Assembly: GCF_006345805.1 (NCBI RefSeq)
Contig: NC_043025.1
Span: 12,648,001-12,712,000, forward strand
Length of the DNA: 64,000 nt
Direction of reading: 5' to 3'
Origin: Octopus sinensis
Lineage: Eukaryota
Part shown: in pieces, positions 6,500 to 33,668 of the stretch
Layout of the letters: the number at the start of each line of letters is the position of its first letter
How positions within the stretch are numbered: position 1 is the stretch's first letter
Notes under the pieces: model-generated
The model's database searches: none
What the model was told of the DNA's origin: nothing
Seen by the model: only the letters and a program-made list of their open reading frames with translations
Position numbers and translations under genes: made by a program

Positions 6500-6790
6500 A
6501 ATTTTCATTACCAACCCGGCCCTGTACTACAAATGTCTTGCTTTCAAAAGTTCCGAATTAAAATCTTCCACTGAACCTTAGTCATAATTTGTGTTTCTAA
6601 CACTAGCTGAACTTCTTTGTTATATTTAAAATTGGTTGAAAGACACACAGAGCATCTCAGCAGGAATAGGGTAACAGAAGGTTTAAACTATACAGTGGAG
6701 AAACAATTCTTAACCCTTTTGATACCACCTCTGGCTCAGTAGTACAAATCTCTTGTTTTCAATTAAAATCATGGAAATTTTAAAATGTGT
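6500..6790 (-). mobile_element. TTAA/CCC-ended MITE, degraded tandem dimer
   Basis: Reverse complement of the 252-bp array unit, including its spacer (GGAGAAACAATTCTTAACCCTTTTGATACC); paralogue at about 21055-21330. Confidence 0.7.
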
Positions 6791-7261
6791 GTGTATGTAT
6801 TAGGCTATCAAGAAAGTTCTTGTGGAATTTATCGTTTTAAAACTTGTGTTACTGTTTTTGAATAATGTGGACAAGAAGCAAATTTGCACAACTTTCTTAT
6901 TCCAGTTCTAGCTAGGCCAAGGAGCTGCTGCAACAGCTTCTGATATCAACGATGTGCTTGGCCCTATTTCCATCACACGAATTGTATAACGACCAGATTG
7001 TGAGAGTCAGCTTAGTGGTTGGATGCTGACGAAGCTCCACGGTAGAGAAGTACTGTCAGCAAATGGATGATATGCGTAAGAAGCTCTGACAACAACAGCC
7101 AGCATTGGTCAATAGAAAGGGACCATGGCTACTCTGTTTATTTTTTTTGTGTGCATCTGAATTTAAAGGTTCACAACCACTATAACTTTCTGGATAACCT
7201 AATGTGTGTGTGTATGTATATTTGGTTTGCAAGTGTCTTCTACTATAGCCTCTTTATCACT

Positions 7262-7596
7262 TTCCTCGGCTGTTACTGATGTCTGCCTCTTAGGTGGACG
7301 ACTTCCTTTTGAATGCTCTCGTCTTATGTTTGTTTAGATCCGTTTGTGCAGTGAATTTCTCAGGAACAGTGCTTGATGGAATCTTTAAACAGTTCTGCTT
7401 TTTACCTGAGAATTGCTGCCCCTGTTTTCTTTCATGTTCACTTCTTATCAAATGCGATTGATACAGTTTCTCTTATTTTTGTTGTAGGTATTGCTGTTGT
7501 CGTCGAAGTCAGCTTCCAGAGAGTCGCGGCACTTCACTGGGTGCTATGGGACTGAAGGTGGCCGATGGTTTTAGAAGATGCAATGGTGTCGCTTGT
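7262..7596 (-). pseudogene. Decayed copy of the terminal coding exon of the three-exon gene
   Basis: Aligns in blocks with 22870-23812, including the acceptor (TTACAG); several large internal deletions break the frame. Confidence 0.85.
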
Positions 7597-7740
7597 CTGT
7601 AATTAGATAAAAAGGAATAAAACAATTTTATTGATATAAAAAGATAATGTTGATGAAATTATTGTGCGTATAAAACATATGTAAGGAGAAAAACGGATAT
7701 GTATAGAGAGAGATAAATAGAAAGAAGCATGTATATAGAG

Positions 7741-7881
7741 CAGTGCTTTTCAAACTTTTTGCTGGAGTGGAACCCCTGTGCAATAATTTAATGGTCTTAT
7801 GCACACATATCTGAATTAAAAATTACAGCCAATTTTAGCAGTGTTGTAACTTCTTGTGGAACCCTGGTTGAAAACCCACTA
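7741..7881. mobile_element. hAT-like MITE
   Basis: CAGTGCTTTTCAA...TTGAAAACCCACTA termini; 8-bp TSD ATATAGAG/ATATAGGG; absent at the paralogous site near 24300. Confidence 0.75.
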
Positions 7882-9530
7882 ATATAGGGTAGGTCAATAC
7901 AGTAAAGTTTATAGCACAAACCTAAATATAGAAACAATTCCCATTATAGTAGCTACATTAGGTTTGATATAAAGAACTTCAGACAAATACGTAACAGAAA
8001 CTAGCACTGCCCACATCCTACGCAAAACACTTTCAATACAGTAACCATAGGAGCATCACTCAGTAGTAAGGTGAAAGCATGCTAATAAGACTACTGAATA
8101 ATAATAGTTTTAGATAAGGTGGGTGAGGTTACTATGTCAGACAATGATTAGCATCATTTCTTCCAATTTTACATTCAGAGATCAAATTTTACCGAGGTTG
8201 TCTTTGCCCAATTGACCCATGAAAGGCAAAGTCGACCTCTGCGGAATTTGAAATCAAATTCGATGACTGGCATCTGTGCTTGTGGAGTGCTAAGAGCACC
8301 ATTTGAGTGTGATCGTTACTAGTATCACCTTGCTAGCACTTGTGCATTGCCAGTAGCACCCACTACATTCTCAGAGTGGTGGGCATCCAGCTGTAGAAAC
8401 GACAGGATCTAGTCAATTACATCAACCCCACCTCTGTAAGGGCAAAGTCAACCTCAGCAGTCTCTGAACTTGCTGCCTTAATAGTAATTACTTCGTCTAT
8501 TGGCTACAAGGGCTTAAAGTTACAATAATATTATTATAATCTTTCCTACTCTGGGTACAAGGCCTGGATTTTATGGTGAGTGGGACAGTCAATAACATCG
8601 ACCCCAGTACACAACTGGTACTTAATTTATGGACCCTGAGAGGATGCAGGGCAAAGATGACCATGGCGGAATTTGAACCCAAAACACTGCTAATAATTCT
8701 GCCACAGGGGCAGGTATTTTGGGGGATAATTCGACCCCACTAGTACTTAATTTATCACCCCCCGAAATGATGAAAGCCATAAAAAAACCTGCCAAAACAA
8801 CAGTTCTCTGACCTGCCAGCTCTTGTTAAGTGTGTGCATATATAGGAGTGGTAAGTAGGTTGTTTACCAACCGCATGGCATCCTGGGCGAGTGTCTTCTA
8901 CTATAGCCTTGTGAGTGGATTTGGTAGATGGAAACTGAAAGAAGCCCGTCGCATATATATATATGCATAGAAATTGAAATATTTTCCACACATAGAACAG
9001 ATGCGACAAATTACAGAAGCTACACACAATAGAAGATAAACCTAGCCTGAATAGGAAACTGCAATGGAACACTAGCACCCACCACAACATATGATGGTAG
9101 AGGATCCCCACAAACTGGTTACAATATAGACAAATATATAATTTTTTTTTTTTTGATTTATTATTATTACTAGTATTGTTGTTATACATACGGATGTAAA
9201 ACACATGAACGAGAGATATAAGCATGTGCAAATGAAGACATACAAAACGGCTGGTAAGGAGAGACACAAATAAGAAAACAAAGGACCACTGATGCGGTCA
9301 CAGGAGTGTGGCGAAAGAACTCTGAAGCAAACTAACACCAATATATACCCTGTGGCACATGTTGACCAGAATTCAGAGTATGATGGAAGAAGGCTTGCTC
9401 TTTCTTCCATAGAAGAAAAAATTGATATCGGACCATGTTAACATCAAAAAGGTGCTTTTTTTTTTTCTATTGAAAATTCCAATTTTTTGACTGGTGTGTC
9501 ACCATGTTTTCGTATATTTCAACCAGAAAA

Positions 9531-16323: not shown

Positions 16324-16999
16324 TCACTCGGGTTGAGTATGAATGAAGTTATGTTTAGTCAAGTGTGCTCTTTGAGAGAACGATTTGCCACAGGTATGAC
16401 AAACATAGAGTTTTTCTCCTGTGTGAACACGTTGGTGAGTAGTTAATTGATCGTGGAGAGAGAAAGATTTTCCACAGGTGTCACAGTGGTATGGCTTCTC
16501 ACCTGTATGAATGCGTATGTGAATGGTCAAGCTACCTGTCTGAGTGAACGACTTGCCACAGATGTCACAACGATATGGTTTCTCTCCAGCATGAATGTGT
16601 TTGTGCTTCGTCAGAGCGCTTCCATTCGAGAATGATTTATCACAGGTGTTGCACAGGTAGGGTCTCTCGTCGCTGTGGGTCGTCAGGTTGCCACTCCGCG
16701 AAAACAATTTTCCACAGATGTCACAGTCGTACGGCCTCTCTCCTGTATGAATGTGCCTGTGAGCTGTTAAGTTACCACTTAGAGTGAACGACTTACCACA
16801 GATGTCGCAGTGATAGGGCTTCTCTCCTGTATGAGTACGTTTGTGAATAGAGAGGCTATCTTTGCGAGAAAATGTCTTTTTGCAAACATCACAAGGATAT
16901 GCTATTTTCCCTATATCTTTCGGCATCTCGTCAACAAAATTAATCCTTTTAAGGCACTGATTTACATTTAATATTGTCCTCACACAATTCACTTTCCAT
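16324..16999 (-). pseudogene. C2H2 zinc-finger paralogue (ZNF2): 7 fingers (third broken), frameshifted 5' end; possible 200-aa product from ATG 16926
   Basis: The ATG homologous to the ZNF1 start (16999) reads MESELCEDNIKCKSVP* because it lies 73 nt, not 72 nt, before the EMP methionine. Finger 3 ends LTTHSDERP and lacks its second His. The ORF-track N-terminus (17088) lies in a SINE. Confidence 0.75.
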
Positions 17000-17029
17000 C
17001 TCTCACCGAAATATAATGATGCTTTTCTA

Positions 17030-17185
17030 TTTCTCGGAGTGGTTGTCATTAGGAAGGGCATCCAGCTGTCGAAACTCTTCCAGATCAATATTGGAGCCTG
17101 GTGCAGCCATCAGGTTTGCCAGCCCTCGGTTGAATCGTCCACCCCATGCTAGCATGGAAAGCGGACGTTAAACGATGATGATGAT
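17030..17185 (-). mobile_element. SINE-like repeat family C, partial
   Basis: Reverse complement of TTTAACGTCCGCTTTCCATGCTAGCATGGG...GGATGCCCTTCCTAA. Confidence 0.7.
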
Positions 17186-18827: not shown

Positions 18828-20100
18828 TCATATGTTGTGGTGGGTGCTAGTGTTCCATTGCAGTTTCCTATTCAGGCTAGGTTCATCTTCTATTATGTGT
18901 GTAGCTTCTGTAATTTGTCTGATTGTTGCATCTGTTCTATGTGTGGACAATATTTTAATTTCTATGTTGTTGACTGATCCCCCGTGTTGGTACAGAATCG
19001 ATGAGCTTTTACCTTCCTTGAGTTGTCTCCAATGTCCATGTACCCGCTCTCCTATGCTTCTTGCCGTTTCCCCTACGTATGTCGTTGTCTTATTGCCTGG
19101 CTTTTCAACAACCTTAATCCTTAGCTTAAGTTTGTCTAGGGTCCTTCTAAAGCGGTATGCCAGTTCACCTCCAGGGGTGGTGTCAACGAACATGACACTC
19201 TGGTATTTATGGCGATCATACCAAGAGGTGGCCTCCCCTATTTTCTTTTTTTGTCCTTTCTATAGTGTTCCATGACTTGTACCTATAGAGTGGGCAAATC
19301 CCATTCCTATCATTACATAATATATTATCAAATTTCTTTATGGCTCCTTTGTATACTCTGACCCTTTCTTTATGGCTGTAACCTGAGAACTGCATGCGGT
19401 GAATGAAATAATGTATGTGTCTCTTTAATTCTGTAGGCTCGCATATGCGTGACACATTTCTCATTATTCTGATGAGGTCTGCCATAAAAATATTGAATTT
19501 GGCTGAGTTCCGGTGGATCAAGTATTTTGAGGCCATAGTATGAATAAAGGATCTGGGTTTTATTATTCACAATTTCTAGCGAGAGTTCTGTGTCTAGTAC
19601 TGGTAGTCTATTGTTACCTTAATACTCTGGTGGATGGAGTTAGCTATTTGCTGGAATGCTCTCCATAGTATTAGTTTCTATTATTATATCAACAGTACTC
19701 TCTTGTGGGGGTGCCTTTACCACTATGTTGATATCATCAACATAGCAAGAGTACATGTTCACGAGTATGGTGTTAGGCGTTCCTTAAGCCTTCTGTCCCA
19801 CCATACCGTGAAAAGGTTGGCCACATCACCAGCGATACTAACGCTGATGGCTGCCCCCTGGTCATATATTTTATTCTTAAACGTGTGGCCTTTTAGAGTA
19901 ACTCTTATACTAGCTCCTAGTGCAATCATTTTCTTTACCTGATGGACATTTGCGGGGCTCTGGTTCATCCGCGCCATATATATTTGCTAATCCTAGAAGA
20001 TTGATGGGAGGAAGTGAATGAATTATCCGCAAGTCAAGGATGTGTCCTTAATGCTTGCAACAATCCAGACTCTGCTAAATTTACATTAAGGTGGACATGG
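18828..20100 (-). mobile_element. Penelope-like retroelement relic (RT plus GIY-YIG endonuclease)
   Basis: Minus-strand KIYDQGAAISVSIAGDVANLF, CYVDDINIVV, thumb region RMQFSGYS, and YVGETARSIGERVHGH...RQITEATHI...PSLNRK. Confidence 0.85.
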
Positions 20101-22606
20101 CAAATGTAAAAACAACAACAAAATATTTCCTCTTTTTTTATTTCAAAATCATTCAATCTGTCACATAGCATGTTTCAGTGGACAATGATGCTGTCAGTCT
20201 GCAATATCTTCTCCTCCACACTCAGGCACTAAAGAAACGGAACAGGGGCTGATGTGGCAGAGATGAATTTCAATGTTGTAGAAATGTGAGAGGTCGTATT
20301 GATGGAAGGGGTGGTGGACTGAGAGATATCGTTGACAGGGAGGTGTCTTCAGCAGTGAATCAAAGGCTAATTAACTAACATTAATAAATCAATATATAAT
20401 AATTATGGCAGGGGAATTGCTGATTACATCAACTCTGGTACTTAATTTATTGACCTCGATGGGATTTGAACTCAGAACTTAAGTGTCATTTCGTCCATCT
20501 TTAACATTTTGCCTGGTTTGCTAATGTTTCCCATCTTAATGATAATAATCCTTTCTAATATAGGCACAAGGCCTGGAATTTGTGGAGGGGAGGGTAGTCG
20601 ATCACATTGATCCCTGTTCTTGGTTGGTACCTAATTTATCGGGATGATAGGCAATGTTAACCTTTGAGGAATTTGAACTCAGAATTTAAAGTAAGGAAGA
20701 AATGCCACTTAGCATTCACCTGGTGTGCTAATTATTTTGCCACCTTAATAGTAGTAATAATAATAATCCTTTTTAATATAGGTACAAGGCCTGAAATTTG
20801 GGGGAGAGGTAGAGTTGATTAAACCAACCCTGGTGTTTCATTAGTACTTAATTTATTGGCCTTGGTGGCATAGCAACAGATGGAATACTAGTAAGCATTT
20901 TGTCTGCTAGCTTGCCACCTTATTGATGACAACAACAACAACTTATAAGGAATGTCTTGTAAAGTTAATTAAGGACAAACAATCATTATAGGATGATGTG
21001 AGGTAGAAAATGTGCTGTGTGTGTCTTTGAAGTCATGTAGAAGTGTATGCACCTTAACCCTTTCATTACCAACCCAGCCCTGTACTACAAATGTCCTGCT
21101 TTCATAAGTTCTGAATTAAAATCTTCCACTAAACCTTAGTCACAATTTCTGTTCCTAACACTAGCTGAAATTCTTTGTTATATTTAAAATTGATTGATAG
21201 TAAACATATAGCAGGAATAGGGTAACAGAAGGTTTAAACTATACAGTGGAGAAACAATTCTTAACCCTTTTGATACCACCTCTGGCTCAGTAGTACATGT
21301 GTCTTGTTTTGAATTAAAATCATAGATACATGGAAATTTTAAAGTGTGTGTATTAAGCTGTCAAGAAAGTTCTTGTGGAATTTGTTACTCTTTTCGAATA
21401 ATGTGCACAATTTTCTTATTCCTGTCCTAGCTAGGCCAAAATGCTGCTGAAACAGCTTGCGATATCAATGATGCGTTTGGCCTGATTTCCACCACATGTG
21501 TTAAATAACAACCAAAACAAAATGCTGTTTTGAAGTGTTGTCTTCCCTTCTTTTATGTAACAAGAACGACCAGATTGTGACAGTCAGCTAAGTGGTTGTA
21601 TGCTGACGAAGCTCCACGGCACTTGCCTTAACAGAAGGTCATGGTGACTGTTTGGTGGTCTCATGGATCACAGCTTTTTGGATCCAAGTGGAGAAGTACT
21701 GTCGGCAAATGGATGAATTGCATAAGAAACTCTGACAACAACAGCCAGCATTGGTCAATAGAAAGGGACCATGGCAAAACTGTGGTGTTTATTTCTAAAG
21801 GTTCAAAACCACAAGAACTTTCTTGACAATCTAATATATATGTGTGTGTGTATATATTTTGTTTGCAAGATTCTTTGTGTGTTGAAGCGTATTTTATGGT
21901 CTGGCAAGTGTCTTCTACTATAGCCTTGTGAGTGGATTTGGTAGACAGAAGCCTGTTGTGTGTGTATATATGTTTACATCCCGTTAACTTAGCGTTTCGG
22001 CAAAAGAAATTGATAGAATAAGTCCTGGGGTTGACTAAACGCGGCAGTTCAGCATGGCCACAGTCAAATGACTGAAAAGATTTAGCTATTTATGAAGAAG
22101 GATATATATTTTTGAGTGTGGTTATTAAGCTGAATATAGCTCACTTGGAGCACTAAAATTCCTGTCTGTATTTTATTTGCAAATGTTGGTAATCTCAAAG
22201 TAAAGCCGTGTATTTTATAATAATATATATATAAGTACAATTCGTGCGCAATTAAGCTAGCAGCACCGAGTCGAACAAACCTATCCGTAATACAATGATG
22301 TCCTTACCTGTTATATGGGAATGTAAATATGTTTGCAAATTTTTGTTACTGTGTTCTGAATACTTTTATTTTGATAAATGTTGCTTACTACAAGTTATGG
22401 ATGACTTCATTGCTTAGAAAATGTATGGTGTACCTTTTAAAACACCTGCTGCTGTCTACCGTATAACAAGGATCATACTTACTGGGAGTGCCTCTGAATA
22501 CATCTCTCCCTGAGAGGGTTTAAACACCTCTGACATACATATGTTATTGTAAAATGTAATACATACACACACACACTCGTTATGACAGCATGTGGCCAAG
22601 CAGTGT

Positions 22607-23812
22607 TTACTCAACAAGAGATATATTTTTAATTTTACCAGGATTTACATCTCTAGTCAACCCGTTTTGCACATTTGCTCCAAATTTGAAATTCTTCCCT
22701 GCCTTGTTCCTCCTCGACTTCAAAATCCGCAGAAGTGCCTGGCTTCGCTCTTTCTGCATGAGAGTGATGACAACGTTCTCCTTCGGCGCCTCTTCATCAC
22801 CCTCCTCGCTGTCAACATCCCGACGGTCATGAAGCTCTTCCCCGTTGCATTTAGACGTAACCTTTTCTCGGCTGTCATTGATGTCCGTGTCTTGGGTGGA
22901 CGGCTTCCTTTTGAAGGCTTTCGTCTTGTGTTTGTTTGGATTCTTTGTTGCATTAAAACCTGGGACTTGTACGACAGCACCTGCAGTTGTTGCGTTCCGT
23001 TTGTGAAGTAAATTTGTCAGGAACAGTGCTGAATGCTTGAAAGAATATGGCGAAGGGATCTTTAAACAGTTCTGCTTTTTACCTGAGAATTGCTGCCCCT
23101 GTTTTCTTTCATGTTCGCTTCTTATCAAATGCGATTGGTTCATTTTATTTGATACAGTTTCTCTCATCATTTTTGTTGTAGGTATTGCTGTTGTTCTCAT
23201 CGAAGTCAACAAACTTTGGTCGGCTTCCAGAGAGTCGCGGCACTTTACTGGGTGGTATGGAACTAAAGGCTCGGAAGATTTGAATTTATTAACGAATTGC
23301 GAAGAACCCCAGAATGAAAACTGGTCCGGCGCTGTTGAAACAATCACAAAAGCTTCCATATTGTCGTCAGAAAGTTTTACAGCGTCTTTCACAAAAGAAA
23401 GAATTTCGTTCGCTTTCTCTGAGCGACCTTCGTTTGACAATTCTGTCTGTTCAACTTTTGGAATAACAGTGACAGGAAATTGTTTCTTACTAAGGAATTT
23501 GTCAGCAGAGAGAAGAGATTCTTTGGTAGATCCGTTGCCAGGCATAAAGTTTCTGTGGTTCTGTGTAAGATCCAGAGCTTGGTCCTCGACCTGGTGGAAT
23601 TGGTTGAGATTAGGGACGGCAATGATTGATGCAGTACCATACAGAGATGGAAAAGCATGATTATTATTGTTGTTAGTGGAATAAGCCCAGCCGATGCAAT
23701 TTGAAGAGTTTTTATCAACGTAGCTTTTGTCTCTGCTAGTGTGGTCAATAGTTTTGGAAGATGCAATGGTGTCGCACTGGGATGGCTTGTCATTCTTTCT
23801 CGTTGTGCTTGT
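22607..23812 (-). CDS. Exon 3 (terminal coding exon, 1206 nt) of an uncharacterised three-exon gene
   Basis: The frame stays open 89 codons upstream of the tracked ATG, up to acceptor TTTTTTCCTTAATTACAG; an in-frame TAA lies just inside the intron; phase-0 start; AATAAA candidates near 22370 and 22177. Confidence 0.85.
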   Translation of the reverse strand, partial: TSTTRKNDKPSQCDTIASSKTIDHTSRDKSYVDKNSSNCIGWAYSTNNNNNHAFPSLYGTASIIAVPNLNQFHQVEDQALDLTQNHRNFMPGNGSTKESLLSADKFLSKKQFPVTVIPKVEQTELSNEGRSEKANEILSFVKDAVKLSDDNMEAFVIVSTAPDQFSFWGSSQFVNKFKSSEPLVPYHPVKCRDSLEADQSLLTSMRTTAIPTTKMMRETVSNKMNQSHLIRSEHERKQGQQFSGKKQNCLKIPSPYSFKHSALFLTNLLHKRNATTAGAVVQVPGFNATKNPNKHKTKAFKRKPSTQDTDINDSREKVTSKCNGEELHDRRDVDSEEGDEEAPKENVVITLMQKERSQALLRILKSRRNKAGKNFKFGANVQNGLTRDVNPGKIKNISLVE

Positions 23813-23939
23813 CTGTAATTAAGGAAAAAAACAATTTTATCGATATAAAAAAATAACGATGATAAAAAATTATTGTAACGAAGGCCGGTTAGAATGTCGT
23901 GGGTTCGAGCCCCATACTGACCATGTAACTTTTTATATA

Positions 23940-24240
23940 GGCGCAGGAGTGGTAAGTAGCTTTGTTACCAACCACATGGTTCAGTCCCACTGCGTGGCAC
24001 CTTGAGCAAGTGTCTTCTGCTATAGCCCCGGGCCGACCAATGCGTTGTGAGTGGATTTGGTAGACGGAAACTGAAAGAAGCCCGTCGTATATGTGTGTCT
24101 GTATTTGTCCCCGTTACTTAGCGGTTCGGTAAAAGAGACCGATAAAATAAGTACTGGGCTTACAAAGAATAAGTCCCAGGGTCGAGTTGCTCGATTGAAG
24201 GTGGTGCTGCAGTTAACTGACTGAAACAAGTAAAAGAGTG
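23940..24240 (+). mobile_element. tRNA-derived SINE, family A
   Basis: Head-to-tail match ending GACTGAAACAAGTAAAAGAGT. Confidence 0.8.
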
Positions 24241-25914
24241 CTCAGGTGCGTATAAAACATATGTAGAGAGAAGGAAAGGGAGAGACAAAAAGATATATGT
24301 ATAGAGAGAAGGTCAATACAGTAAAATTTATAGCACCAAGGCACACAGAGCTGCGGTCAGTAGTGTAGTGAAAGCATGTGATGAAGATTAGACTACTGAA
24401 TGATGAGGTAACTCGAATGTAGAGCCTAAAAACAGAAACAATTCCCATTATAGTAGGAACATTAGGTATGATAAGAAAGAACTTCAGACAGAAACTAGCA
24501 CTGCCCACATCCTATGCAAAACACTTTCAATACAGTAACCAGAAGAGCATCACAGAGCTGCGCTCGGTAGTAAAGTGAAAGCACGCTATAAAAGTAAGAC
24601 TACTGAATAATAATGGTTTTAAATAAGGTGGGTGAGCTGACAGAGTTGTTACTATGTCAGACAAAATGCTTAGCATCATTTGTTCAAATTCTACTGAGGT
24701 CGTCTTTGCCGTTCATCCTTTTGGAGTCGACAAATTAAGTGCCAGTGAAATACTGGGGGATGTTGTAATCAACTTTGGCCTTGTACCATAATTTGAAACC
24801 GATAATCGTTTCAAAGTTTGGAACAAGGCCAACAGGTTTTGAGAGAAAGTCGGTTATGTTGAACAAGGAAAGGAAACTCAAACGTATCCAAATTGCCAAC
24901 AGTTCTGTCGGTTTGCTGCCTTGATGATGAGAATAATTTATTTCTTTATTACCCACAGGGGACAGACAATGAAATTAAGTTGATTACATCGACTCCAGTG
25001 TATAACTGGTACTTATTTAATTGACCCATGAAAGGCAAAGTCGACCTCTGCAGAATTTGAAATCAAATTCAATGACTGGCATCTGTGCTAAGACCACCAT
25101 CCAAGTGTGATCGTTGCCAGAGCAACAAACTGGCTTCCGTGCTGGTGGCAAGTAAAAAGCACCATTCAAGCGTGGTCATTGCCAGTACCACCTGACTGGC
25201 CCTCATGCCGGTGGCACATAGGAGCACCCGCTACACTCTCAGAGTCGTTGGCATTAGGAAGGGCTGTAGAAAGTCTGCCAGATCAGATTGGAGCCTGGTT
25301 CGCCAGACCTCAGTCAAATCTTCCAACCCATGCCAGCATGGAAAGCGGACGTTAAACAATGATGATTATAATTCATTTATTGGCCACAAGGGCTTACATT
25401 GAAACAATAATTATAATCTTTTCTACTCTAGGTACAAGGCCTGGATTTTGTGGGGAGTGAGACAGCCAATCACTTCGACCACAATACTCAACTGGAACTT
25501 AATTTATGAAAGGTGAACTCGGAACATAAAGGCAGATGAAATACCACAAAGCATTTCGCCAGGTGTGCTAACGATTCTGCCATAATAATTTCTACTCAAA
25601 GCACAAGGCCCTGAAAATTTTGGGGGAAGGAGTATAGTCAAATACATTGACACCAGTGCTTATTTCGACCCTGAAAGGCAAAGCTGACCTTGGCGGAATT
25701 TGAACTCAAAATACTGCTAACCATTTTACCTGGCATGCTAACGATTGTGCCACAAAGGCAGCTATTTTGGGGAAGGGGATAAGTCGATTACATCGACCCC
25801 CCCAGTGTTTCACTGGTACTTAATTTATCACCCCCGAAAGGATGATAGCCATAAAACAACAGTGGAACTTGGGGCAGTTCTCAGGCTTGCCAGCTCTTGT
25901 TAAATGTATATATA

Positions 25915-26225
25915 GGCGCAGGAGTGGCTGTGTGGTAAGTAGCTTGCTTACCAACCACATGGTCCCGGGTTCAGTCCCACTGCGTGGCACTGTGAGCAAG
26001 TGTTTTCTACTATAGCCTAGTGAGTGGATTTGGTAGACTGAAAGAAGCCCGTTGTATACATGCGTTTGTCCCCCGATGCTGGTGTGTTTATGTCCCCGTT
26101 ACTTAGTGGCTTGGCAAAAGAAACCGATAGAATAAGTACCAGGCTTACAAAGAATAAGTCCTGGGGTCGATTTGCTTGACTAAAGGTGGTGCTGCAGTCA
26201 AATGACTGAAACAAGTAAAAGAGTA
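25915..26225 (+). mobile_element. tRNA-derived SINE, family A
   Basis: Head-to-tail match. Confidence 0.8.
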
Positions 26226-26249
26226 TATAGGTTTTGGGTGAGTATTTCT

Positions 26250-27680
26250 TTAAATATAAGAAAGAATTTAGTAAAATAACTTAGTTATCATTCAGCTAGT
26301 GTTAGGAACATAAATTGTGACTAAAGTTTGGTGGAAGATTTTAATTCAAAACTTTTGAAAACAAGACATTTGTACTACAGAGCCAGAAGTGGTTTCAGCC
26401 AGGTTGGTATCAAAAGGGTTAAGAATTGTTTCTCTATTATATATCTTAACCCTTTTGTTACCATATTTCTTCTGTTGAGATGCTCTGTGTTTCTTTCAAT
26501 TAATTTTAAATATAACAAAGAATTTAGTAAAATAACTTAGTTATCATTCAGCTAGTGTTAGGAACATAAATTGTGACTAAGGTTTGGTGGAAGATTTTAA
26601 TTCAAAACTTTTGAAAACAAGACATTTGTACTACAGAGCCAGAGGTGGTTTCAACCAGGTTGGTATCAAAAGGGTTAAGAATTGTTTCTCTATTATATAT
26701 CTTAACCCTTTTGTTACCATATTTCTGTTGAGATGCTCTGTGTTTCTTTCAATTAATTTTAAATATAACAAAGAATTTAGTAAAATAACTTAGTTATCAT
26801 TCAGCTAGTGTTAGGAACATAAATTGTGACAAGGTTTGGTGGAAGATTTTAATTCAAAACTTTTGAAAACAAGACATTTGTACTACAGAGCCAGAGGTGG
26901 TTTCAACCAGGTTGGTATCAAAAGGGTTAAGAATTGTTTCTCTATTATATATCTTAACCCTTTTGTTACCATATTTCTGTTGAGATGCTCTGTGTTTCTT
27001 TCAATTAATTTTAAATATAACAAAGAATTTAGTAAAATAACTTAGTTATCATTCAGCTAGTGTTAGGAACATAAATTGTGACAAGGTTTGGTGGAAGATT
27101 TTAATTCAAAACTTTTGAAAACAAGACATTTGTACTACAGAGCCAGAGGTGGTTTCAGCCAGGTTGGTATCAAAAGGGTTAAGAATTGTTTCTCTATTAT
27201 ATATCTTAACCCTTTTGTTACCATATTTCTGTTGAGATGCTCTGTGTTTCTTTCAATTAATTTTAAATATAACAAAGAATTTAGTAAAATAACTTAGTTA
27301 TCATTCAGCTAGTGTTAGGAACATAAATTGTGACAAGGTTTGGTGGAAGATTTTAATTCAAAACTTTTGAAAACAAGACATTTGTACTACAGAGCCAGAG
27401 GTGGTTTCAACCAGGTTGGTATCAAAAGGGTTAAGAATTGTTTCTCTATTATATATCTTAACCCTTTTGTTACCATATTTCTGTTGAGATGCTCTGTGTT
27501 TCTTTCAATTAATTTTAATATAACAAAGAATTTAGTAAAATAACTTAGTTATCATTCAGCTAGTGTTAGGAACATAAATGTGACAAGGTTTGGTGGAGAT
27601 TTTAATTCAAAACTTTTGAAAACAAGACATTTGTACTCAGAGCCAGAAGTGGTTTGAGCCAGGTTGGTATCAAAAGGATG
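26250..27680 (+). repeat. Tandem array of a piggyBac-like MITE plus short spacer, 252-bp period, about 5.6 copies
   Basis: Repeated ORFs at 26584/26836/27088/27340 give the period; unit runs TTAACCCTTTTGTTACCA...TGGTATCAAAAGGGTTAA plus GAATTGTTTCTCTATTATATATC. Confidence 0.9.
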
Positions 27681-28094
27681 AAAGGAAACGTGAAACTCCA
27701 AGTAATGTCTTTGCAGCTTTTTAATAAAATATATATATATCTGTAAATTGTGTCTTTGTGTTAGTGTTTATACCACTTGACAACTGGTGTTAGTGTCTTT
27801 ACATCCCTATAACTTAGCAGTTCAGCAAAGGTGACTGATAGAATAAGTGCCAGGCGTTTAAAAAACCATAAGCCCTGGGGTAGATTTTATTCAACTAAAA
27901 ACCCTTGAAGGTGGTGCTCCAGCATGGCCACAATCTATTGACTGAAACGAGTAATAGATTACTACACGTGACCCTCCCTTAAGGTAACAGAGTTCGATTT
28001 GAGGGAGACGTGGCTGTGATTTCTAGAGGTCTGAGCGAATTGGACATACTGAAAGTTGGAGTTTTCTTGATTGTGTAATTTAAGTGTGACTTAC

Positions 28095-28270
28095 CTTGAC
28101 CCTGTTGACGAGGTTCTTTTTGGGCGGGACCCAATTGACATTTGGGGGTACGTGCCTTCCCGTCACGTCGACCTCCCAGTTGCCAATGTTGTGGAGGTAC
28201 ATCCGCATGTTGACACGGAACGAACAACGATGGCCACTTTTCGCTCGTTTCTCATCTTTCTTCAGGCAAT
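28095..28270 (-). CDS. Exon 2, copy b (176 nt): (D)CLKKDEKRAKSGHRCSFRVNMRMYLHNIGNWEVDVTGRHVPPNVNWVPPKKNLVNRVK
   Basis: Acceptor TTTCTGTTTTTCTCTTTTCCACAG and donor AAG/GTAAGT; phase 1 in, phase 0 out, matching exons 1 and 3. Confidence 0.85.
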
Positions 28271-29265
28271 CTGTGGAAAAGAGAAAAACAGAAATATACA
28301 AGAAATCGAAATGAACCAATCCTATGACTGGCACCCGGCAGATGCCAGGACCCCTGGACTGGTGGTACGTAAAAAGCACTATCCAACTCGTGGCCGATGC
28401 CAGCGCCGCCTCGACTGGCTTCCGTGCCGTTGGCATGTAAAATGCGCCAATCCGACCGTTGCCAGCCTCGCCTGGCACCTGTGCAGGTAGCACGTAAAAA
28501 GCACCCACTACACTCACGGAGTGGTTGGTGTTAGGAAGGGCATCCAGCTGTAGAAACATTGCCTGGTGCAGCCTCCTGGCTTCCCCGGTCGAACCGTCCA
28601 ACCCATGCTAGCATGGAAAGCAAACATTAACCCTTTGTCACCATATTTCTGCTGAGATGCTCTGTGTTTCTTTCAATTATTTTAAATATAACAAAGAATT
28701 TAGTAAAATAACTTAGTTATCATTAAGCTAGTGTTAGGAACATAAATTGTGACTAAGGTTTGGTGGAAGATTTTAATTCAAAACTTATGAAAACAAGACA
28801 TTTGTACTACAGAGCCAGAGGTGGTTTGAGCCAGGTTGGTATCAAAAGGATGAAAGGAAACGTGAAACTCCAAGTAATGTCTTTGCAGCTTTTTAATAAA
28901 ATATATATATATCTGTAAATTGTGTCTTTGTGTTAGTGTTTATACCACTTGACAACTGGTGTTAGTGTCTTTACATCCCTATAACTTAGCAGTTCAGCAA
29001 AGGTGACTGATAGAATAAGTGCCAGGCGTTTAAAAAACCATAAGCCCTGGGGTAGATTTTATTCAACTAAAAACCCTTGAAGGTGGTGCTCCAGCATGGC
29101 CACCGACTAATGACTGAAACGAGTAATAGATTACTACACGTGACCCTCCCTTAAGGTAACAGAGTTCGATTTGAGGAGACGTGGCTGTGATTTCTAGAGG
29201 TCTGAGCGAATTGGACATACTGAAAGTTGGAGTTTTCTTGATTGTGTAATTTAAGTGTGACTTAC

Positions 29266-29441
29266 CTTGACCCTGTTGACGAGGTTCTTTTTGGGCGGGA
29301 CCCAATTGACATTTGGGGGTACGTGCCTTCCCGTCACGTCGACCTCCCAGTTGCCAATGTTGTGGAGGTACATCCGCATGTTGACACGGAACGAACAACG
29401 ATGGCCACTTTTCGCTCGTTTCTCATCTTTCTTCAGGCAAT
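29266..29441 (-). CDS. Exon 2, copy a (176 nt), identical to copy b by eye
   Basis: Same acceptor, donor and coding sequence at offset +1171. Confidence 0.8.
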
Positions 29442-30019
29442 CTGTGGAAAAGAGAAAAACAGAAATATACAAGAAATCGAAATGAACCAATCCTATGACT
29501 GGCACCCGGCAGATGCCAGGACCCCTGGACTGGTGGTACGTAAAAAGCACTATCCAACTCGTGGCCAATGCCAGCGCCGCCTCGACTGGCTTCCGTGCCG
29601 TTGGCATGTAAAATGCGCCAATCCGACCGTTGCCAGCCTCGCCTGGCACCTGTGCAGGTAGCACGTAAAAAGCACCCACTACACTCACGGAGTGGTTGGT
29701 GTTAGGAAGGGCATCCAGCTGTAGAAACATTGCCTGGTGCAGCCTCCTGGCTTCCCCGGTCGAACCGTCCAACCCATGCTAGCATGGAAAGCAAACATTA
29801 ACCCTTTTGTTACCATATTTCTGTTAAGATGCTCTGTGTTTCTTTCAATTATTTTAAATATAACAAAGAATTTAGTAAAATAACTTAGTTATCATTCAGC
29901 TAGTGTTAGGAACATAAATTGTGACGAAGGTTTGGTGGAAGATTTTAATTAAAAACTTATGAAAACATGACATTTGTACTCAGAGCCAGAGGTGGTTTCA
30001 GCCGGGTTAAACAATGATG

Positions 30020-30520
30020 ATGATCCAGCCTGCCAATGGTAACAGGCAGACCACATGGGTACAGACACCATGCAAAAAGCACCCAGATCGCTCTGCAAAA
30101 AAAAGGGTTCATCTTAGAAAAGGTGTTCAGACTTAAAAGCTATGCCAAAGCAGACCTCACTAGTGCTGGGGCCACATAAAAAGCACCCAGTCCTCTTTGT
30201 AAAAGTGCCAGCATTAGGAAGGGCATCCAGCTGTAAAAGCCCTATTGCCAAAGTAGACCTCTGGTGCTGGTACCATGTAAAAAGTAACCAGTCCACTCTG
30301 GAAAGTGGGTGGCATTAGGAAGGGTGTCCAGTTATAAAAGCCATGCCAAAGCAGACCTCTCTGGTGCCACATTAAATGCTCCCAGCCCACTCCATAAAGT
30401 CGTTAGCATTAGGAAGGGTCCCTAATTGTAGAAACCATGTCAAAGCAAACCTCACTGGTGTTGGTGCCATGTAAAAAAAGCACCCAGTCCACTTTGTAAT
30501 TTGGGCACCCAGCCCTAAAA
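30020..30520 (-). repeat. Degenerate tandem array (about 100 bp) derived from SINE family C
   Basis: Repeated AAAAGCACCCAGTCC...GCATTAGGAAGGG...CCATGCCAAAGCAGACCTC blocks. Confidence 0.6.
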
Positions 30521-31204
30521 AAAGAGCTGGCAATTGAACTGCCCCAAATTCCCCTGTTGTTATGGCTGGGTGCCCTTCCTGATATTTCTGCTTGAACACC
30601 TCCGTGCTGAAATGTCATGGAAAATAGGCCTCAGTTTCAAAACATTGATGTCAAGGTCTGAAAGGAATAATTATCATTTCTGTTGATTACTCGAAAAAAG
30701 CCAATAGGAAATAACACTTACTAAACAAAACTTTAAAATTTGTTAGTGGTGGTGACGATGGTGTTACTATTGTTGTTGGTGGCGGTGACAGGCGCAAACA
30801 TTGTTTTTGCCTTTGATTTAATCAACAAAACCACTTTCCCCACATCCTTGTATCTGGAATTTCCGTCCAGGAAGAAATATATGAACAGGGAACGACCTGC
30901 ATAAATTCCCTTACTACAGAAATAAAGTTAATTAAAAGCCTAAATATCTGATGTATATTATAATTAAGATTATTATTTAGCACTTTCATCATTAGACCAA
31001 AAAACATTGGGTTTTCTAAAAATATTTACTGTTATAAACCCAAACTCGAATAGCAAAGTTTAAAAGGTTTTAAGCAACTAAAAATACAGCAATATACAAT
31101 ACGAACAAAGATTGCTAAATTGTAAGCAAAACCAAACTTCAACACAATAACATTTTTATGCAGCGAGTTGCTATATTCTGGACTAATTAAAATCAACATG
31201 AGGA

Positions 31205-31500
31205 ATATCTGAAGGAGAATTCATCTCCGAAGCAATTGCCCCAGCTCCCCTTCAGGGTTGTCGAAAGCAATGTGGTGGTGGACAACGAAAAACCTGGCTG
31301 ATCTGGAACCCAACCTAGGCCTGCCCATGTCTACGGTGTTCGCCGCTGGAATAAGGAGTGGTTGGAGATCACGCGGTCGTTGGCCTCAAATCGCCAGGCC
31401 TGGTCGGCGTTTGTGAGAGATGCAGCATTGAGGATGAATGAAGCCAGCTCAACCCACCCCGGGTGGATGCTGTCTCAAGACAAGACAAAAACTAAAATCC
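31205..31500 (+). mobile_element. RTE-type LINE 3' end
   Basis: WNKEWLEITRSLASNRQAWSAFVRDA (RTE-like W...A.DR..W...V terminus); same family as 60930-61570. Confidence 0.65.
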
Positions 31501-31589
31501 ACGCTGAAAACGTCTGCAAACAACAGAACAGAACTCTGTGCAGTGCGACTGCACACATATAGCAACAATCAAAATCACGTATACAAAAC

Positions 31590-32370
31590 TAAAATCAAGG
31601 TACACTATGCATGAATAAAAGACAGGATGGTCACAACTGGAACATCTTTTAAATCATACCTCTGCTGGATCTAAGCTGACCAGGGGCTAAACAATAACAA
31701 GAAGGACACATTAAATCATGTAGCCCTAGATACACTATGCATGAATAAAAGATGGGATGGTCGCAACTGGAACATCTTTTAAATCATAGCTCTGCTGGAT
31801 CTAAGCTGACCAGGGGCTAAACAACAAGGGCGACACATTAGATAATGTAGCCCTAGATACACTATGCCTGAATAAAAGACAGGATGGTCACAGCTGGAAC
31901 ATCCTTTAAATCATAGCTCTGCTGGATCTAAGCTGACCAGGGGCTAAACAACAAGGGAGGCACATTAGATAATGTAGTCCTAGATACACTATGCCTGAAT
32001 AAAAGACAGGATGGTCGCAACTGGGACATCTCTGATCATGGGTTTGCTGGATCAGGACTGACCTGGGGCTAAACAACAACAAGGAAGGACACGTTAGATA
32101 ATGTAGTCCTAGATACACTGTGCCTGAATAAAAGACGCGATGGTCACAACTGGAGCATCTTTTCAATCATAGCTCTGCTGGATCTAAGCTGACCAGGGGC
32201 TAAACATCAACAAAGGGGGTCAAATTGAATGATAAATGTAGAGCAAGATGGGTTTGGCTGTGTCTGGTAAAAGAAAGCAAAGAAACGGAATAATAGGATT
32301 GTCCATAGTCAGAACGATGTCTTTGAATCCAGGGCTGCTGCTGGATCTCAGCTAACCTGGCTCTAAATAT
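31590..32370 (-). repeat. Minisatellite, about 120-bp degenerate unit
   Basis: Repeated TAGATACACTATGCCTGAATAAAAGAC...GCTGGATCTAAGCTGACCAGGGGCTAAAC; inverse of 38150-39200. Confidence 0.85.
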
Positions 32371-32810
32371 TAGCATCTTTATCGGCGTCAGCATCACTAT
32401 CGTAATTAGCATCATAATTGTCACTATCATCTTGATTACCATCACCGTTATTATTATCATTATTATCTTTTCTCGTTATTATATTCAATGTGGCTATCAC
32501 CATCATCGTCGTCATCTTCATCATTGCTGACAGCATCATCAACAACAAACATCTTCGTCGTTGTTGGCTCCAGCGATAGTGAAATCAAAATAAACAAACC
32601 AGACGAAGTGAATGAACCAAGGAATAATTGAAAGAGGCTGACGATAGGAAGACGGACGGGGAAGATACAAAGAAATGAAAACGAAGAAGATAAGAGATAA
32701 AGAAAGGCAGAAGATGAAAAGAAAAAAGAGAAGGGTGGGAAAAAAGGGTGACAAGAAAGAAAGTAAAAAAGAAGGGAATAATGAAAGTGAAACAAAGCGA
32801 TTCCACTCAC

Positions 32811-33198
32811 CGTCTCTGCACCGCCCCATTCCACCGCACTCCCTTTCACAGTTCATTTGACCGCTACACATAAGGATCTCTTTGGCCACCCAGATGCGCC
32901 GACCTAGTTTCTGCAAGTGGGCCCACGGCTGGACCCCATTATCATTGCTGCTATTATTGTTGTAAGAGGCGGCAGCGGTGGACGTGGTGGTGGTGGCGGC
33001 TGTGACCGCCGTTGGACGGATTCGAACGCGGTCCGACAGGAAGCCGTCGTTGCCTTTCTCCACGTACACAATGTCGTTCTTCACCTCCCGGCCTTTCCTT
33101 ATGATTCTGCCCCGTCTGAAGTCTGCGATGTCGTGTAGGTAACCCCTGAGTTCCTCTTCTTTCACGGTCACTGCCGTCGTGTTCCGCCGCTGTGGCAT
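32811..33198 (-). CDS. Exon 1 (388 nt coding): MPQRRNTT...VQPWAHLQKLGRRIWVAKEILMCSGQMNCERECGGMGRCRD
   Basis: ATG with A at -3 in a GC/CpG-rich island; donor GACG/GTGAGT in phase 1; G+AT completes Asp with exon 2. Confidence 0.8.
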
Positions 33199-33439
33199 CG
33201 TCGTTGATGTCCACCACCGGCCGCTTGTAAAGGGAGAACCGCTCTTTCTCCCTCTCCGTGGCGTGTTCGAGTGTCCGGAATAATGACAAACTCCACTCTC
33301 CCTCCGCTTGCCACACTCAACTCGCCACACTCGTGCGCTGACACTCTTTCTTTCTTTCTTTCTTTCTCTCTGTCTGTCACTCACTTTCACCGAATAGTAA
33401 CAACAGCAATACATAAACACTCATTCATCCATTCACACA

Positions 33440-33668
33440 AACACACACCTATCTATCTATTTATCCATATATCTGTATGTTTGTTTGTCTATCTATCCAT
33501 CTATCTACGTATCTGTCTATCCATCCATCTATCTGTCTATCTATCTATCTATCCACCTATATACCTACCTACCTACCTATCTATCCATCCATCCATCCAT
33601 CTATCTATCTATCTGTCTGTCTATCTGTGTCTACCTATCTATCTATCTACCTACCTATCTATCCATCC

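What the first reader, a model, noticed from the sequence alone, without database searches (positions are those of the whole stretch)
27458..30010. Zinc-domain exon duplicated by MITE-MITE unequal crossover; the two copies cannot both be used in frame
Seen: exon 2 occurs twice, 1171 bp apart, with intact splice sites. It is 176 nt (phase 1 in, phase 0 out), so splicing both copies reads ...NRVK-ATT-GCC-TGA and stops at once. The middle MITE (about 28627-28850) is chimeric: its left flank and 5' variants (CAATTATTTT, AAAACTTATG) match the 29798 copy, while its 3' end and right flank (GAGCCAGGTTGGTATCAAAAGGATGAAAGG) match the 27458 copy. This is the pattern expected from non-allelic recombination. 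Inference: either a nascent mutually exclusive exon pair, a loss-of-function/NMD allele, or an assembly duplication.
Basis: partly seen in the sequence, partly recalled or inferred. Interest (0 to 1): 0.8.

Follow-up and report, generated by a model that had tools for sequence, protein, structure and literature searches.

The report
Transposon-mediated exon duplication in octopus gene
In the Octopus sinensis assembly, a 1.17-kb piece of an uncharacterised gene holding its second exon is present twice in tandem, joined through copies of a small piggyBac-type transposon; using both copies breaks the reading frame, and the sister species O. vulgaris has only one copy.

Summary
The window is Octopus sinensis chromosome CM016887.1. 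The gene is LOC115226066, on the minus strand, with three coding exons.

- **The duplication.** Exon 2 is 176 nt, phase 1 in and phase 0 out. It occurs twice, 1171 bp apart, at 28095-28270 and 29266-29441. The two copies are identical, including their splice sites.
- **Reading frame.** Splicing both copies gives ...NRVK-IA-stop. Skipping both also shifts the frame.
- **The repeats.** The flanking repeats are real piggyBac-type MITEs with CCC...GGG termini and 17/18-nt inverted ends. A TTAA target duplication is shown by an empty versus filled site between species.
- **Outgroup.** The O. vulgaris orthologue and a paralogue each have one exon 2, flanked on both sides by the same MITEs in the same orientation. 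The junction MITE carries the 5' signature of the O. vulgaris right-hand copy and the 3' end of the left-hand copy. This supports homology-driven unequal exchange.
- **The history is not a single clean event.** The present right-hand MITE is not the junction's parent.
- **Open questions.** An assembly artefact cannot be excluded (about 20%). No transcript data were reachable, so whether one or both copies are spliced in is untested.
- **Verdict.** This is a new instance of a known kind. Interest is moderate to low.

The parts
26249..27457 (+). Tandem array of 252-bp units. Each unit is TTAA, then a MITE of about 221 bp, then TTAA, then a 23-bp spacer. These are 4.7 units; the next unit, L, completes the 5.7-copy array.
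   Evidence: TRF: period 252, 5.7 copies, 98% matches. Three units are 99.6-100% identical. The orthologous O. vulgaris array has 3.7 units with the same truncated outer end.
27458..27677 (+). MITE copy L. It is the last array unit and lies next to duplicated unit A. Its 3' end is cut at ...CAAAAGG|ATGAAAGG.
   Evidence: Alignment. The same truncated 3' end and flank occur in O. vulgaris (Ov_L).
27678..28626 (-). Unique part of duplicate A: intron sequence with SINE fragments, plus exon 2 copy A.
   Evidence: It matches the O. vulgaris state at 5 of the 6 sites where A and B differ.
28095..28270 (-). Exon 2, copy A (the downstream copy in the transcript). 176 nt, phase 1 in and phase 0 out.
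   Evidence: It encodes DCLKKDEKRAKSGHRCSF...NRVK, which is identical in the RefSeq, O. vulgaris and O. bimaculoides proteins.
28627..28849 (+). Junction MITE M. Its 5' part carries the signature CCCTTTGTCACC and CAATTATTTT (right-hand type, equal to O. vulgaris R1). Its 3' part GGTTTGAGCC...AAAAGG and flank are the left-hand type.
28850..29797 (-). Unique part of duplicate B, with exon 2 copy B.
   Evidence: B-specific states are CCGA at 29104-29106 (equal to the O. vulgaris paralogue), a 1-bp deletion at 29174/5, and A at 29567.
29266..29441 (-). Exon 2, copy B (the upstream copy in the transcript). Identical to copy A.
29798..30010 (+). MITE copy R. Its 3' end has an internal 15-bp deletion (..CAGCCGGGTTAA) and is followed by the unique flank ACAATGATGATG.
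   Evidence: It resembles O. vulgaris R2 at its 5' end and 3' end, with an R1-like patch (CATGAC, ACT-CAG).
32811..33198 (-). Exon 1 coding part, from MPQRR (RefSeq X1 starts 72 codons further upstream, at 33414). The donor GACG|gtgagt is phase 1. It encodes the first four invariant Cys residues of the domain.
22607..23812 (-). Exon 3. Its acceptor is ttaattacag| in phase 0. It encodes 401 codons plus the stop.
22520..22523 (.). Empty TTAA site just downstream of the gene. O. bimaculoides carries a MITE-spacer-MITE dimer here, flanked by TTAA on both sides.

Best explanation
The duplication is most likely real and arose by repeat-mediated unequal exchange in the O. sinensis lineage.

Ancestral state. 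Exon 2 of LOC115226066 was bracketed by same-orientation copies of a roughly 221-bp piggyBac-type MITE. One group lay 356 bp upstream of the exon in intron 1. A tandem array began 417 bp downstream in intron 2. O. vulgaris still has this arrangement.

The event. After the split from O. vulgaris, a homology-driven exchange joined the intron-1 MITE to the intron-2 MITE. This could have been non-allelic recombination or template switching. Most simply it happened between two differing haplotypes. The result is a direct tandem duplication of 1171 bp: MITE, exon 2, chimeric MITE, exon 2, MITE. The same locus also gained two 252-bp array units and lost one right-hand MITE unit, so it is a site of repeated unequal exchange.

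Consequence (inferred, not shown). Both exon copies have identical, strong splice sites and are 995 nt apart. The default outcome is inclusion of both copies. That creates a stop two codons into the second copy and probably leads to nonsense-mediated decay. Only transcripts that skip one copy encode the protein. The allele would then be a hypomorph, and only in a trivial, frame-enforced sense a 'mutually exclusive' pair. The two copies give the same protein.
For: - The window is an exact match to O. sinensis GCA_006345805.1 CM016887.1.
- The gene model is validated by three species' proteins.
- The duplication and its frame consequences are shown.
- The O. vulgaris orthologue (L001) has one exon 2, with two MITE units on one side and 3.7 on the other, all in the same orientation. 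The O. vulgaris paralogue (L004) is also single-copy with MITEs on both sides.
- The junction MITE combines the R1-specific 5' signature with the L-specific 3' end.
- Array units are 100% identical in O. sinensis, with 5.7 versus 3.7 units and species-specific variants. This indicates ongoing unequal exchange or conversion.
- Copy A matches O. vulgaris at 5 of 6 A/B differences and is linked to the R1-type junction half. Copy B carries a 3-base variant shared with the paralogue. This fits two parental haplotypes.
- The window has no N. The junction repeat is a single 223-bp unit, too short an overlap for a long-read assembler to mis-join on (the assembler point is inference).
- No inverted repeat or docking-type complementarity exists in the gene, and the inter-copy intron is long. 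Nothing would therefore enforce single inclusion.
Against: - There is only one O. sinensis assembly, and neither reads nor transcripts were reachable.
- That assembly has 5.2% duplicated BUSCOs, against 0.4-0.5% in the O. vulgaris and O. bimaculoides assemblies (1.9% in A. fangsiao) (PMC10700109). It therefore holds some false duplications.
- A/B divergence of about 0.4-0.6% is in the range of octopus heterozygosity (1.22% in O. vulgaris, same paper). Two stacked haplotypes would look the same.
- One-base deletions relative to O. vulgaris run at 4-5 per kb in the duplicated region, against 0.65 per kb in the flank. This indicates a poorly polished stretch.
- The present right-hand MITE is not the parent of the junction's 5' half, so one simple crossover does not explain everything.
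- RefSeq models use one copy only. This says nothing about double inclusion either way.
Confidence: 0.62

Rival explanations
1. Assembly artefact. The animal has one exon 2 per haplotype. The assembler strung the two haplotypes of this repeat-bounded segment in tandem.
For: - The two copies differ at a level typical of alleles, and the differences sort as 'O. vulgaris-like' versus 'other'.
- The O. sinensis assembly has 5.2% duplicated BUSCOs (PMC10700109).
- The region has a local excess of 1-bp deletions.
- The segment lies beside a tandem array, where assemblies are fragile.
Against: - There is no gap anywhere in the 64-kb window.
- The duplicate is far shorter than PacBio reads, so single reads would span it.
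- The junction is one 223-bp MITE unit, well below the usual minimum overlap.
- Haplotype duplication usually appears as whole contigs, not as an in-contig 1.2-kb tandem repeat (inference).
Confidence: 0.2
2. The duplication is old, predating the O. sinensis / O. vulgaris split. O. vulgaris lost one copy by the reverse unequal exchange.
For: - Copy B keeps a state (CCGA) shared with the paralogue, whereas copy A and O. vulgaris share CAAT. This could mean the A/B split is older than the species split.
- The locus clearly gains and loses units.
Against: - Both O. vulgaris paralogues are single-copy, so parsimony favours a gain in O. sinensis.
- A/B divergence (about 4 events in 967 bp) is below the O. 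sinensis-O. vulgaris divergence in the same segment (about 11 events).
- The exons and splice sites are still identical.
Confidence: 0.07
3. A regulated, functional mutually exclusive exon pair. Some mechanism ensures that exactly one copy is used in each transcript.
For: - Same length, same phase, and length not divisible by three. Transcripts with 0 or 2 copies are out of frame, which is the pattern of frame/NMD-enforced exclusive exons.
- The idea that tandem duplication breeds such pairs is in PMC6071210.
- RefSeq lists two transcripts with the same protein (two XP accessions). They might differ in the copy used; this could not be checked.
Against: - The copies are identical, so no protein diversity results.
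- No competing RNA structure was found: no inverted repeat of 35 nt or more, and only the 17/18-nt MITE ends at E = 0.29.
- The 995-nt intron rules out steric exclusion, and both introns are GT-AG.
Confidence: 0.08

Closest known systems
Alu-Alu (repeat-mediated) intragenic tandem exon duplications in human genes, for example the BRCA1 exon 13 6-kb duplication and single-exon duplications in DMD (from my own knowledge, not checked here)
   Same: - Same-orientation interspersed repeats sit in the two introns flanking an exon.
- Unequal exchange yields a tandem copy with a chimeric repeat at the junction.
- The exon length is not divisible by three, so including both copies shifts the frame and truncates the protein.
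   Different: - The repeat here is a 221-bp piggyBac-type MITE that also forms a tandem array, not a SINE.
- The species is an octopus.
- The status is unknown (fixed, polymorphic or artefact), and no phenotype or transcript data exist.
Mutually exclusive exons born by tandem exon duplication (Kondrashov and Koonin 2001 and Letunic et al. 2002, from memory; Ivanov and Pervouchine 2018, PMC6071210)
   Same: - Tandem homologous exons of equal length and phase.
- Only single inclusion keeps the frame.
- The duplication includes the adjacent intron sequence.
   Different: - The copies are identical, so there is no isoform difference.
- No docking/selector structure was found.
- Exclusive use has not been observed.
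piggyBac-superfamily MITEs and MITE-derived tandem arrays in molluscs (MITE-to-satellite transitions described in bivalves; from my own knowledge)
   Same: - TTAA target duplication.
- CCC...GGG termini.
- Short inverted ends.
- Non-coding, dispersed copies.
- A tendency to occur as dimers and arrays with a fixed spacer.
   Different: - No autonomous partner was identified here.
- The family was not matched to a named entry. The O. vulgaris repeat paper lists piggyBac and MITE families only in bulk (PMC13282606).

Membership tests
Repeat-mediated tandem exon duplication (unequal exchange) | Two near-identical segments lie in direct tandem, each containing the exon. | tested here: met
   The segments are 1169 and 1171 bp. 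They have 6 differences in the 967-bp unique part, and the exons are identical.
Repeat-mediated tandem exon duplication (unequal exchange) | The single-copy ancestral state has same-orientation repeats on both sides. | tested here: met
   O. vulgaris L001 has MITEs at 6517-6978 and 7930-8862 around the single unit at 6979-7947. The paralogue L004 is arranged likewise.
Repeat-mediated tandem exon duplication (unequal exchange) | The junction repeat is a chimera of the two flanking repeats. | tested here: met
   The 5' signature equals O. vulgaris R1, and the 3' end and flank equal L. The present copy R is not the direct parent, so an extra event or an inter-haplotype exchange is needed.
Repeat-mediated tandem exon duplication (unequal exchange) | The duplication is present in the DNA of the animal, shown by spanning reads and depth. 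| not testable with these tools
   No reads and no second O. sinensis assembly were reachable.
piggyBac-type MITE | A short, non-coding element with terminal inverted repeats. | tested here: met
   The element is about 221 bp. TTAACCCTTTTGTTACCA versus TGGTATCAAAAGGGTTAA match at 17 of 18 positions.
piggyBac-type MITE | TTAA target-site duplication, shown by a filled versus an empty site. | tested here: met
   O. bimaculoides reads ...AGGTGT-TTAA-[dimer]-TTAA-ACCCTCT. O. sinensis, O. vulgaris and the paralogue read ...AGGTGT-TTAA-ACCCTCT.
piggyBac-type MITE | An autonomous piggyBac element with matching ends exists in the genome. | not tested
   No search was made. The octopus genome is not in the searchable DNA collections.
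Mutually exclusive exon cluster | Tandem homologous exons have the same length and phase, and inclusion of 0 or 2 copies breaks the frame. | tested here: met
Mutually exclusive exon cluster | Transcripts contain one and only one of the exons. | not testable with these tools
   RefSeq proteins hold one copy, but exon choice and two-copy RNAs could not be examined.
Mutually exclusive exon cluster | A mechanism of exclusion exists: competing RNA pairing, steric hindrance, or incompatible splice-site types. | tested here: not met
   There is no inverted repeat of 35 nt or more in 22000-33500. The best complementarity is the 18-nt MITE ends at E = 0.29. The intron between the copies is 995 nt, and the exon-2 splice sites are GT-AG.
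Zinc-binding domain | A conserved set of Cys/His ligands. | tested here: met
   Eight invariant positions, C-x5-C-x3-C-x5-C-x3-C-x11-H-x-C-x23-H, in 20 sequences from three phyla. Exon 2 carries the last four.
Zinc-binding domain | Membership of a described zinc-finger family or fold. | tested here: not met
   Pfam gave no hit. A PDB profile search gave a best E of 0.11. The AlphaFold model had pLDDT 77, and its best Foldseek PDB E-value was 1.2.
False duplication in an assembly | The copies adjoin a gap or contig end, or depth is halved. | tested here: inconclusive
   There is no N in the window, and depth is not testable. The level of copy divergence and the excess of 1-bp deletions are compatible with an artefact.

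The most novel reading that the evidence does not exclude
This could be a tandem exon duplication caught at its very start. It would be real, still polymorphic in O. sinensis, and tolerated because one copy is skipped often enough, with two-copy RNAs removed by NMD. That would be the zero-divergence starting state of a frame-enforced mutually exclusive exon pair, created by a mobile element in a gene carrying an undescribed C6H2 domain.
Probability: 0.15. Interest if true: 0.6.

Novelty: new member of a known kind. Interest (0 to 1): 0.33.

Why it matters
If real, this is a clean, datable example (under about 2.5 million years) of a transposon-bounded exon being duplicated. The pre-duplication state is preserved in the sister species. 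It could be used to ask how a spliceosome treats two identical adjacent exons, and how mutually exclusive exons begin.

If it is an artefact, it flags a local error in the O. sinensis reference within an annotated gene.

In either case the mechanism is textbook. The gene is uncharacterised, so the wider impact is limited.

Tried and rejected
- **Exon 2 peptide alone.** Pfam gave only a sub-threshold Alfin hit (E 0.089), and the word-indexed protein search found nothing. The full spliced model was needed.
- **WRKY/FAR1/GCM-type zinc finger.** I suspected this from the sequence pattern. It is not supported: there was no Pfam or PDB sequence hit, and the only WRKY structure in the fold search ranked 20th at E 6.4.
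- **Two-copy transcript product.** Isoform X2 is not on record.
- **RNA docking/selector structures.** None was found.
- **O. bimaculoides as a MITE-free outgroup.** Rejected, because its assembly has gaps (10 N and 362 N) exactly where the flanking MITEs would lie.
- **A single crossover between the present copies L and R.** Rejected as a full account, because the 5' signature of the junction matches O. vulgaris R1 and not copy R.
- **The penelope-like look of ORFs at 18828-19536.** No Pfam support.
Full report
**What is in the sequence**

The region 27458-30010 holds two tandem segments, 27458-28626 and 28627-29797. They align end to end with 18 differing columns. Twelve fall in the roughly 220-bp repeat at the start of each segment. 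Only six fall in the 967-bp unique part: four clustered at 27932-27938, a 1-bp indel at 28003, and G/A at 28396/29567.

On the minus strand each segment contains the same 176-nt exon, at 29441..29266 and 28270..28095. Both have an identical 20-nt polypyrimidine/AG acceptor and a gtaagt donor. They lie 1171 bp apart.

**The gene**

An exon 1 candidate is ATG at 33198 with donor GACG|gtgagt at 32811 (phase 1). An exon 3 candidate has acceptor ttaattacag| at 23812 (phase 0) and a stop at 22607.

- With one copy of exon 2, these join into an open 589-codon CDS.
- With two copies, the product ends ...NRVKIA*.
- With none, the frame also shifts.

This model is 100% identical to Octopus sinensis LOC115226066 isoform X1, which only adds 72 N-terminal residues. 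It is 99% identical to an O. vulgaris protein and 85% to O. bimaculoides LOC106884181. The O. sinensis locus (GCA_006345805.1, CM016887.1:12668082-12683414) is an exact substring of the reverse complement of the window. The window is therefore the O. sinensis reference, and the exon is real and conserved.

**The 'zinc domain'**

Pfam finds nothing in the exon or in the whole protein. An exhaustive HMMER search found 58 relatives. Most match only residues of about 100-190, which is the end of exon 1 plus exon 2.

An alignment of 20 of them has eight invariant Cys/His positions in the pattern C-x5-C-x3-C-x5-C-x3-C-x11-H-x-C-x23-H. It also has invariant Gly, Arg and Trp residues. Exon 1 supplies the first four Cys. 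Exon 2 supplies C, H, C, H.

The named relatives are uncharacterised proteins of Mytilus, Aplysia, Biomphalaria, Octopus, brittle star, sea urchins and amphioxus. Six of the ten scanned carry an N-terminal MoCF_biosynth domain.

There is no PDB sequence match. An AlphaFold model (pLDDT 77) has no significant Foldseek match. 'Zinc domain' is thus a sensible inference from eight invariant ligands, enough for two metal ions. It is not a membership in any described family.

**The repeats**

The 'MITE' is real and of the piggyBac type. Each copy starts TTAA-CCCTTTTGTTACCA and, when complete, ends TGGTATCAAAAGGG-TTAA, a 17/18 inverted repeat.

Just downstream of the gene, O. bimaculoides has a MITE-spacer-MITE dimer between two TTAA. 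O. sinensis (22520-22523), O. vulgaris and the O. vulgaris paralogue have the uninterrupted site with a single TTAA. This is the classic filled/empty-site proof of a TTAA target duplication.

Each unit is a MITE plus a conserved 23-bp spacer plus TTAA. Three units are 99.6-100% identical.

**Comparison with relatives**

- **O. vulgaris orthologue (L001).** It has one exon 2 unit. In window orientation this is preceded by the same array, with 3.7 units and the same truncated outer end, and with the same cut 3' end (CAAAAGG|ATGAAAGG) next to the unit. The unit is followed by two MITE copies: R1 (complete, with spacer) and R2 (with the same internal 15-bp deletion and flank as the O. sinensis copy at 29798).
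- **O. vulgaris paralogue.** It lies 1.6 Mb away (P0006, L004) and also has one exon 2 with MITEs on both sides.
- **Conclusion on the ancestral state.** The single-copy, MITE-bracketed state is ancestral, and the tandem copy is specific to the O. sinensis sequence.
- **O. bimaculoides.** It has one exon 2, but its assembly has gaps exactly where the MITEs would be, so it is uninformative on them.

**The junction**

The middle MITE carries CCCTTTGTCACC, CAATTA-TTTT, CATTAAGC and GACTAAGG. This is exactly the state of O. vulgaris R1 at those four sites. It then carries GGTTTGAGCC and the truncated end and flank of the left copy. That is what a homology-driven exchange between the right-hand and left-hand MITEs predicts.

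The account is not fully simple. After duplicate B there is only one MITE. It looks like R2 at both ends, with an R1-like patch in the middle. R1 has therefore been lost there, or one parent chromosome never had it.

The most economical account (inference) is an exchange between two haplotypes:
- One haplotype resembled O. vulgaris (R1-R2 dimer, CAAT at 27932) and contributed the array, L, A and the 5' half of the junction.
- The other had a single R and the variant CCGA. It contributed the 3' half of the junction, B and R.

In line with this, A equals O. vulgaris at five of the six A/B differences. B's 3-base cluster equals the paralogue state, so it is an older variant and not a fresh mutation.

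Array units also show species-specific shared variants and different copy numbers. Unequal exchange and conversion are therefore recurrent here. Recombination and replication template switching cannot be told apart from the product.

**Real or artefact**

Against an artefact:
- There is no gap in 64 kb.
- The duplicate is much shorter than PacBio reads.
- The junction is a single 223-bp unit, too short to serve as an assembly overlap (inference).

For caution:
- The copies differ about as much as alleles do. Heterozygosity in O. vulgaris is 1.22%.
- The O. sinensis assembly has 5.2% duplicated BUSCOs, against 0.4-0.5% in the O. vulgaris and O. bimaculoides assemblies (PMC10700109).
- One-base deletions relative to O. 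vulgaris run at 4-5 per kb in the duplicated stretch, against 0.65 per kb in the 7.6 kb next to it. This is a mark of poor polishing where short reads map ambiguously. Some A/B and L differences may be such errors.

I put the artefact at about 20%.

**Consequence**

Nothing in the sequence would make the spliceosome choose one copy.
- The splice sites are identical.
- The intron between the copies is 995 nt.
- No inverted repeat of 35 nt or more exists anywhere in the gene. The best complementarity to the unit is the 18-nt MITE ends, at a chance-level E-value.

The default expectation, from established knowledge of exon definition and of human single-exon duplications, is inclusion of both copies, a stop two codons into the second copy, and NMD. 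Productive mRNA would come only from skipping one copy.

RefSeq shows one-copy proteins and two accessions for the same protein. This might reflect either copy being used, but it could not be checked. No transcript assemblies for this gene were reachable. A close paralogue exists at least in O. vulgaris, and this could buffer a loss.

**Comparison with the known, and verdict**

The event is the octopus/MITE counterpart of Alu-Alu exon duplications. It also formally meets the sequence criteria of a frame-enforced mutually exclusive pair (PMC6071210 for the duplication model). It lacks a mechanism of exclusion, any isoform difference, and any expression evidence.

The verdict is a well-supported observation and mechanism, a new instance of a known kind, with moderate-to-low interest. 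The interest would rise if the duplication proves real and polymorphic and single inclusion is shown.

Noticed in passing
window 26249-27677; L001 7930-8862; L004 15406-15819: The 252-bp MITE-plus-spacer array is orthologous in O. sinensis (5.7 units), O. vulgaris (3.7 units) and the O. vulgaris paralogue (1.8 units), with the same truncated outer end. The units carry species-specific shared variants, for example CAATTAATTTT in O. sinensis versus CAATTACTTTT in O. vulgaris. This is concerted evolution of a MITE-derived mini-satellite.
   Followed up: partly
window 22520-22523 versus L002 21975-22456: A MITE-spacer-MITE dimer is inserted at a TTAA in O. bimaculoides. The site is empty in O. sinensis, O. 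vulgaris and the paralogue. The dimer, spacer included, seems to move as one unit.
   Followed up: yes
protein residues about 100-190 (window exon 1 end 32811-32900 plus exon 2): This is an undescribed conserved C6H2 domain with eight invariant Cys/His. It is found in molluscs, echinoderms and amphioxus. Six of ten relatives scanned have it C-terminal to a MoCF_biosynth (gephyrin G-like) domain. There is no Pfam, PDB or fold match.
   Followed up: partly
protein residues about 12-64 (window about 33010-33165, minus strand): A second conserved N-terminal module (TVKEEELRGYLHDIADFRRGRIIRKG...) matches several short proteins of about 100 aa on its own (P0008, P0025, P0026, P0057, P0062).
   Followed up: no
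L004 (O. vulgaris OX597843.1:6169049-6192787): A paralogue of the gene (P0006, about 94% identical) lies 1.6 Mb from the orthologue on the same chromosome. It has the same MITE / exon 2 / MITE-array layout, so the MITE insertions predate the gene duplication.
   Followed up: partly
window 16324-17088 (-): A C2H2 zinc-finger ORF (7 fingers by Pfam) lies downstream of the gene. An O. vulgaris gene model (P0003, 'zinc finger 239-like') starts at the Met inside exon 2 and reads through exon 3 into this zinc-finger gene. This is probably a fused prediction.
   Followed up: partly
window 26758-30008: One-base deletions relative to O. vulgaris occur at 4-5 per kb here, against 0.65 per kb in the adjacent 7.6 kb. 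Copy L alone has four. This probably reflects unpolished long-read consensus where short reads map ambiguously.
   Followed up: partly
L002 14328-14337 and 15196-15557: The O. bimaculoides assembly has gaps 267 bp upstream and 417 bp downstream of its exon 2. These are the places where the flanking MITEs lie in the other species.
   Followed up: yes
window 30134-30460 and 31601-32210: Intron 1 holds two further tandem arrays. One has a 94-101-bp period and is built from SINE-like sequence (gtaaaaagcaccc motif). The other has a 127-bp period and 4.8 copies.
   Followed up: no
window 33199-33414 (-): RefSeq isoform X1 starts 72 codons upstream of the Met used in the O. vulgaris and O. bimaculoides models. 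The extension (MYCCCYYSVKVSDRQRERKK...) is low-complexity and probably 5' UTR.
   Followed up: no
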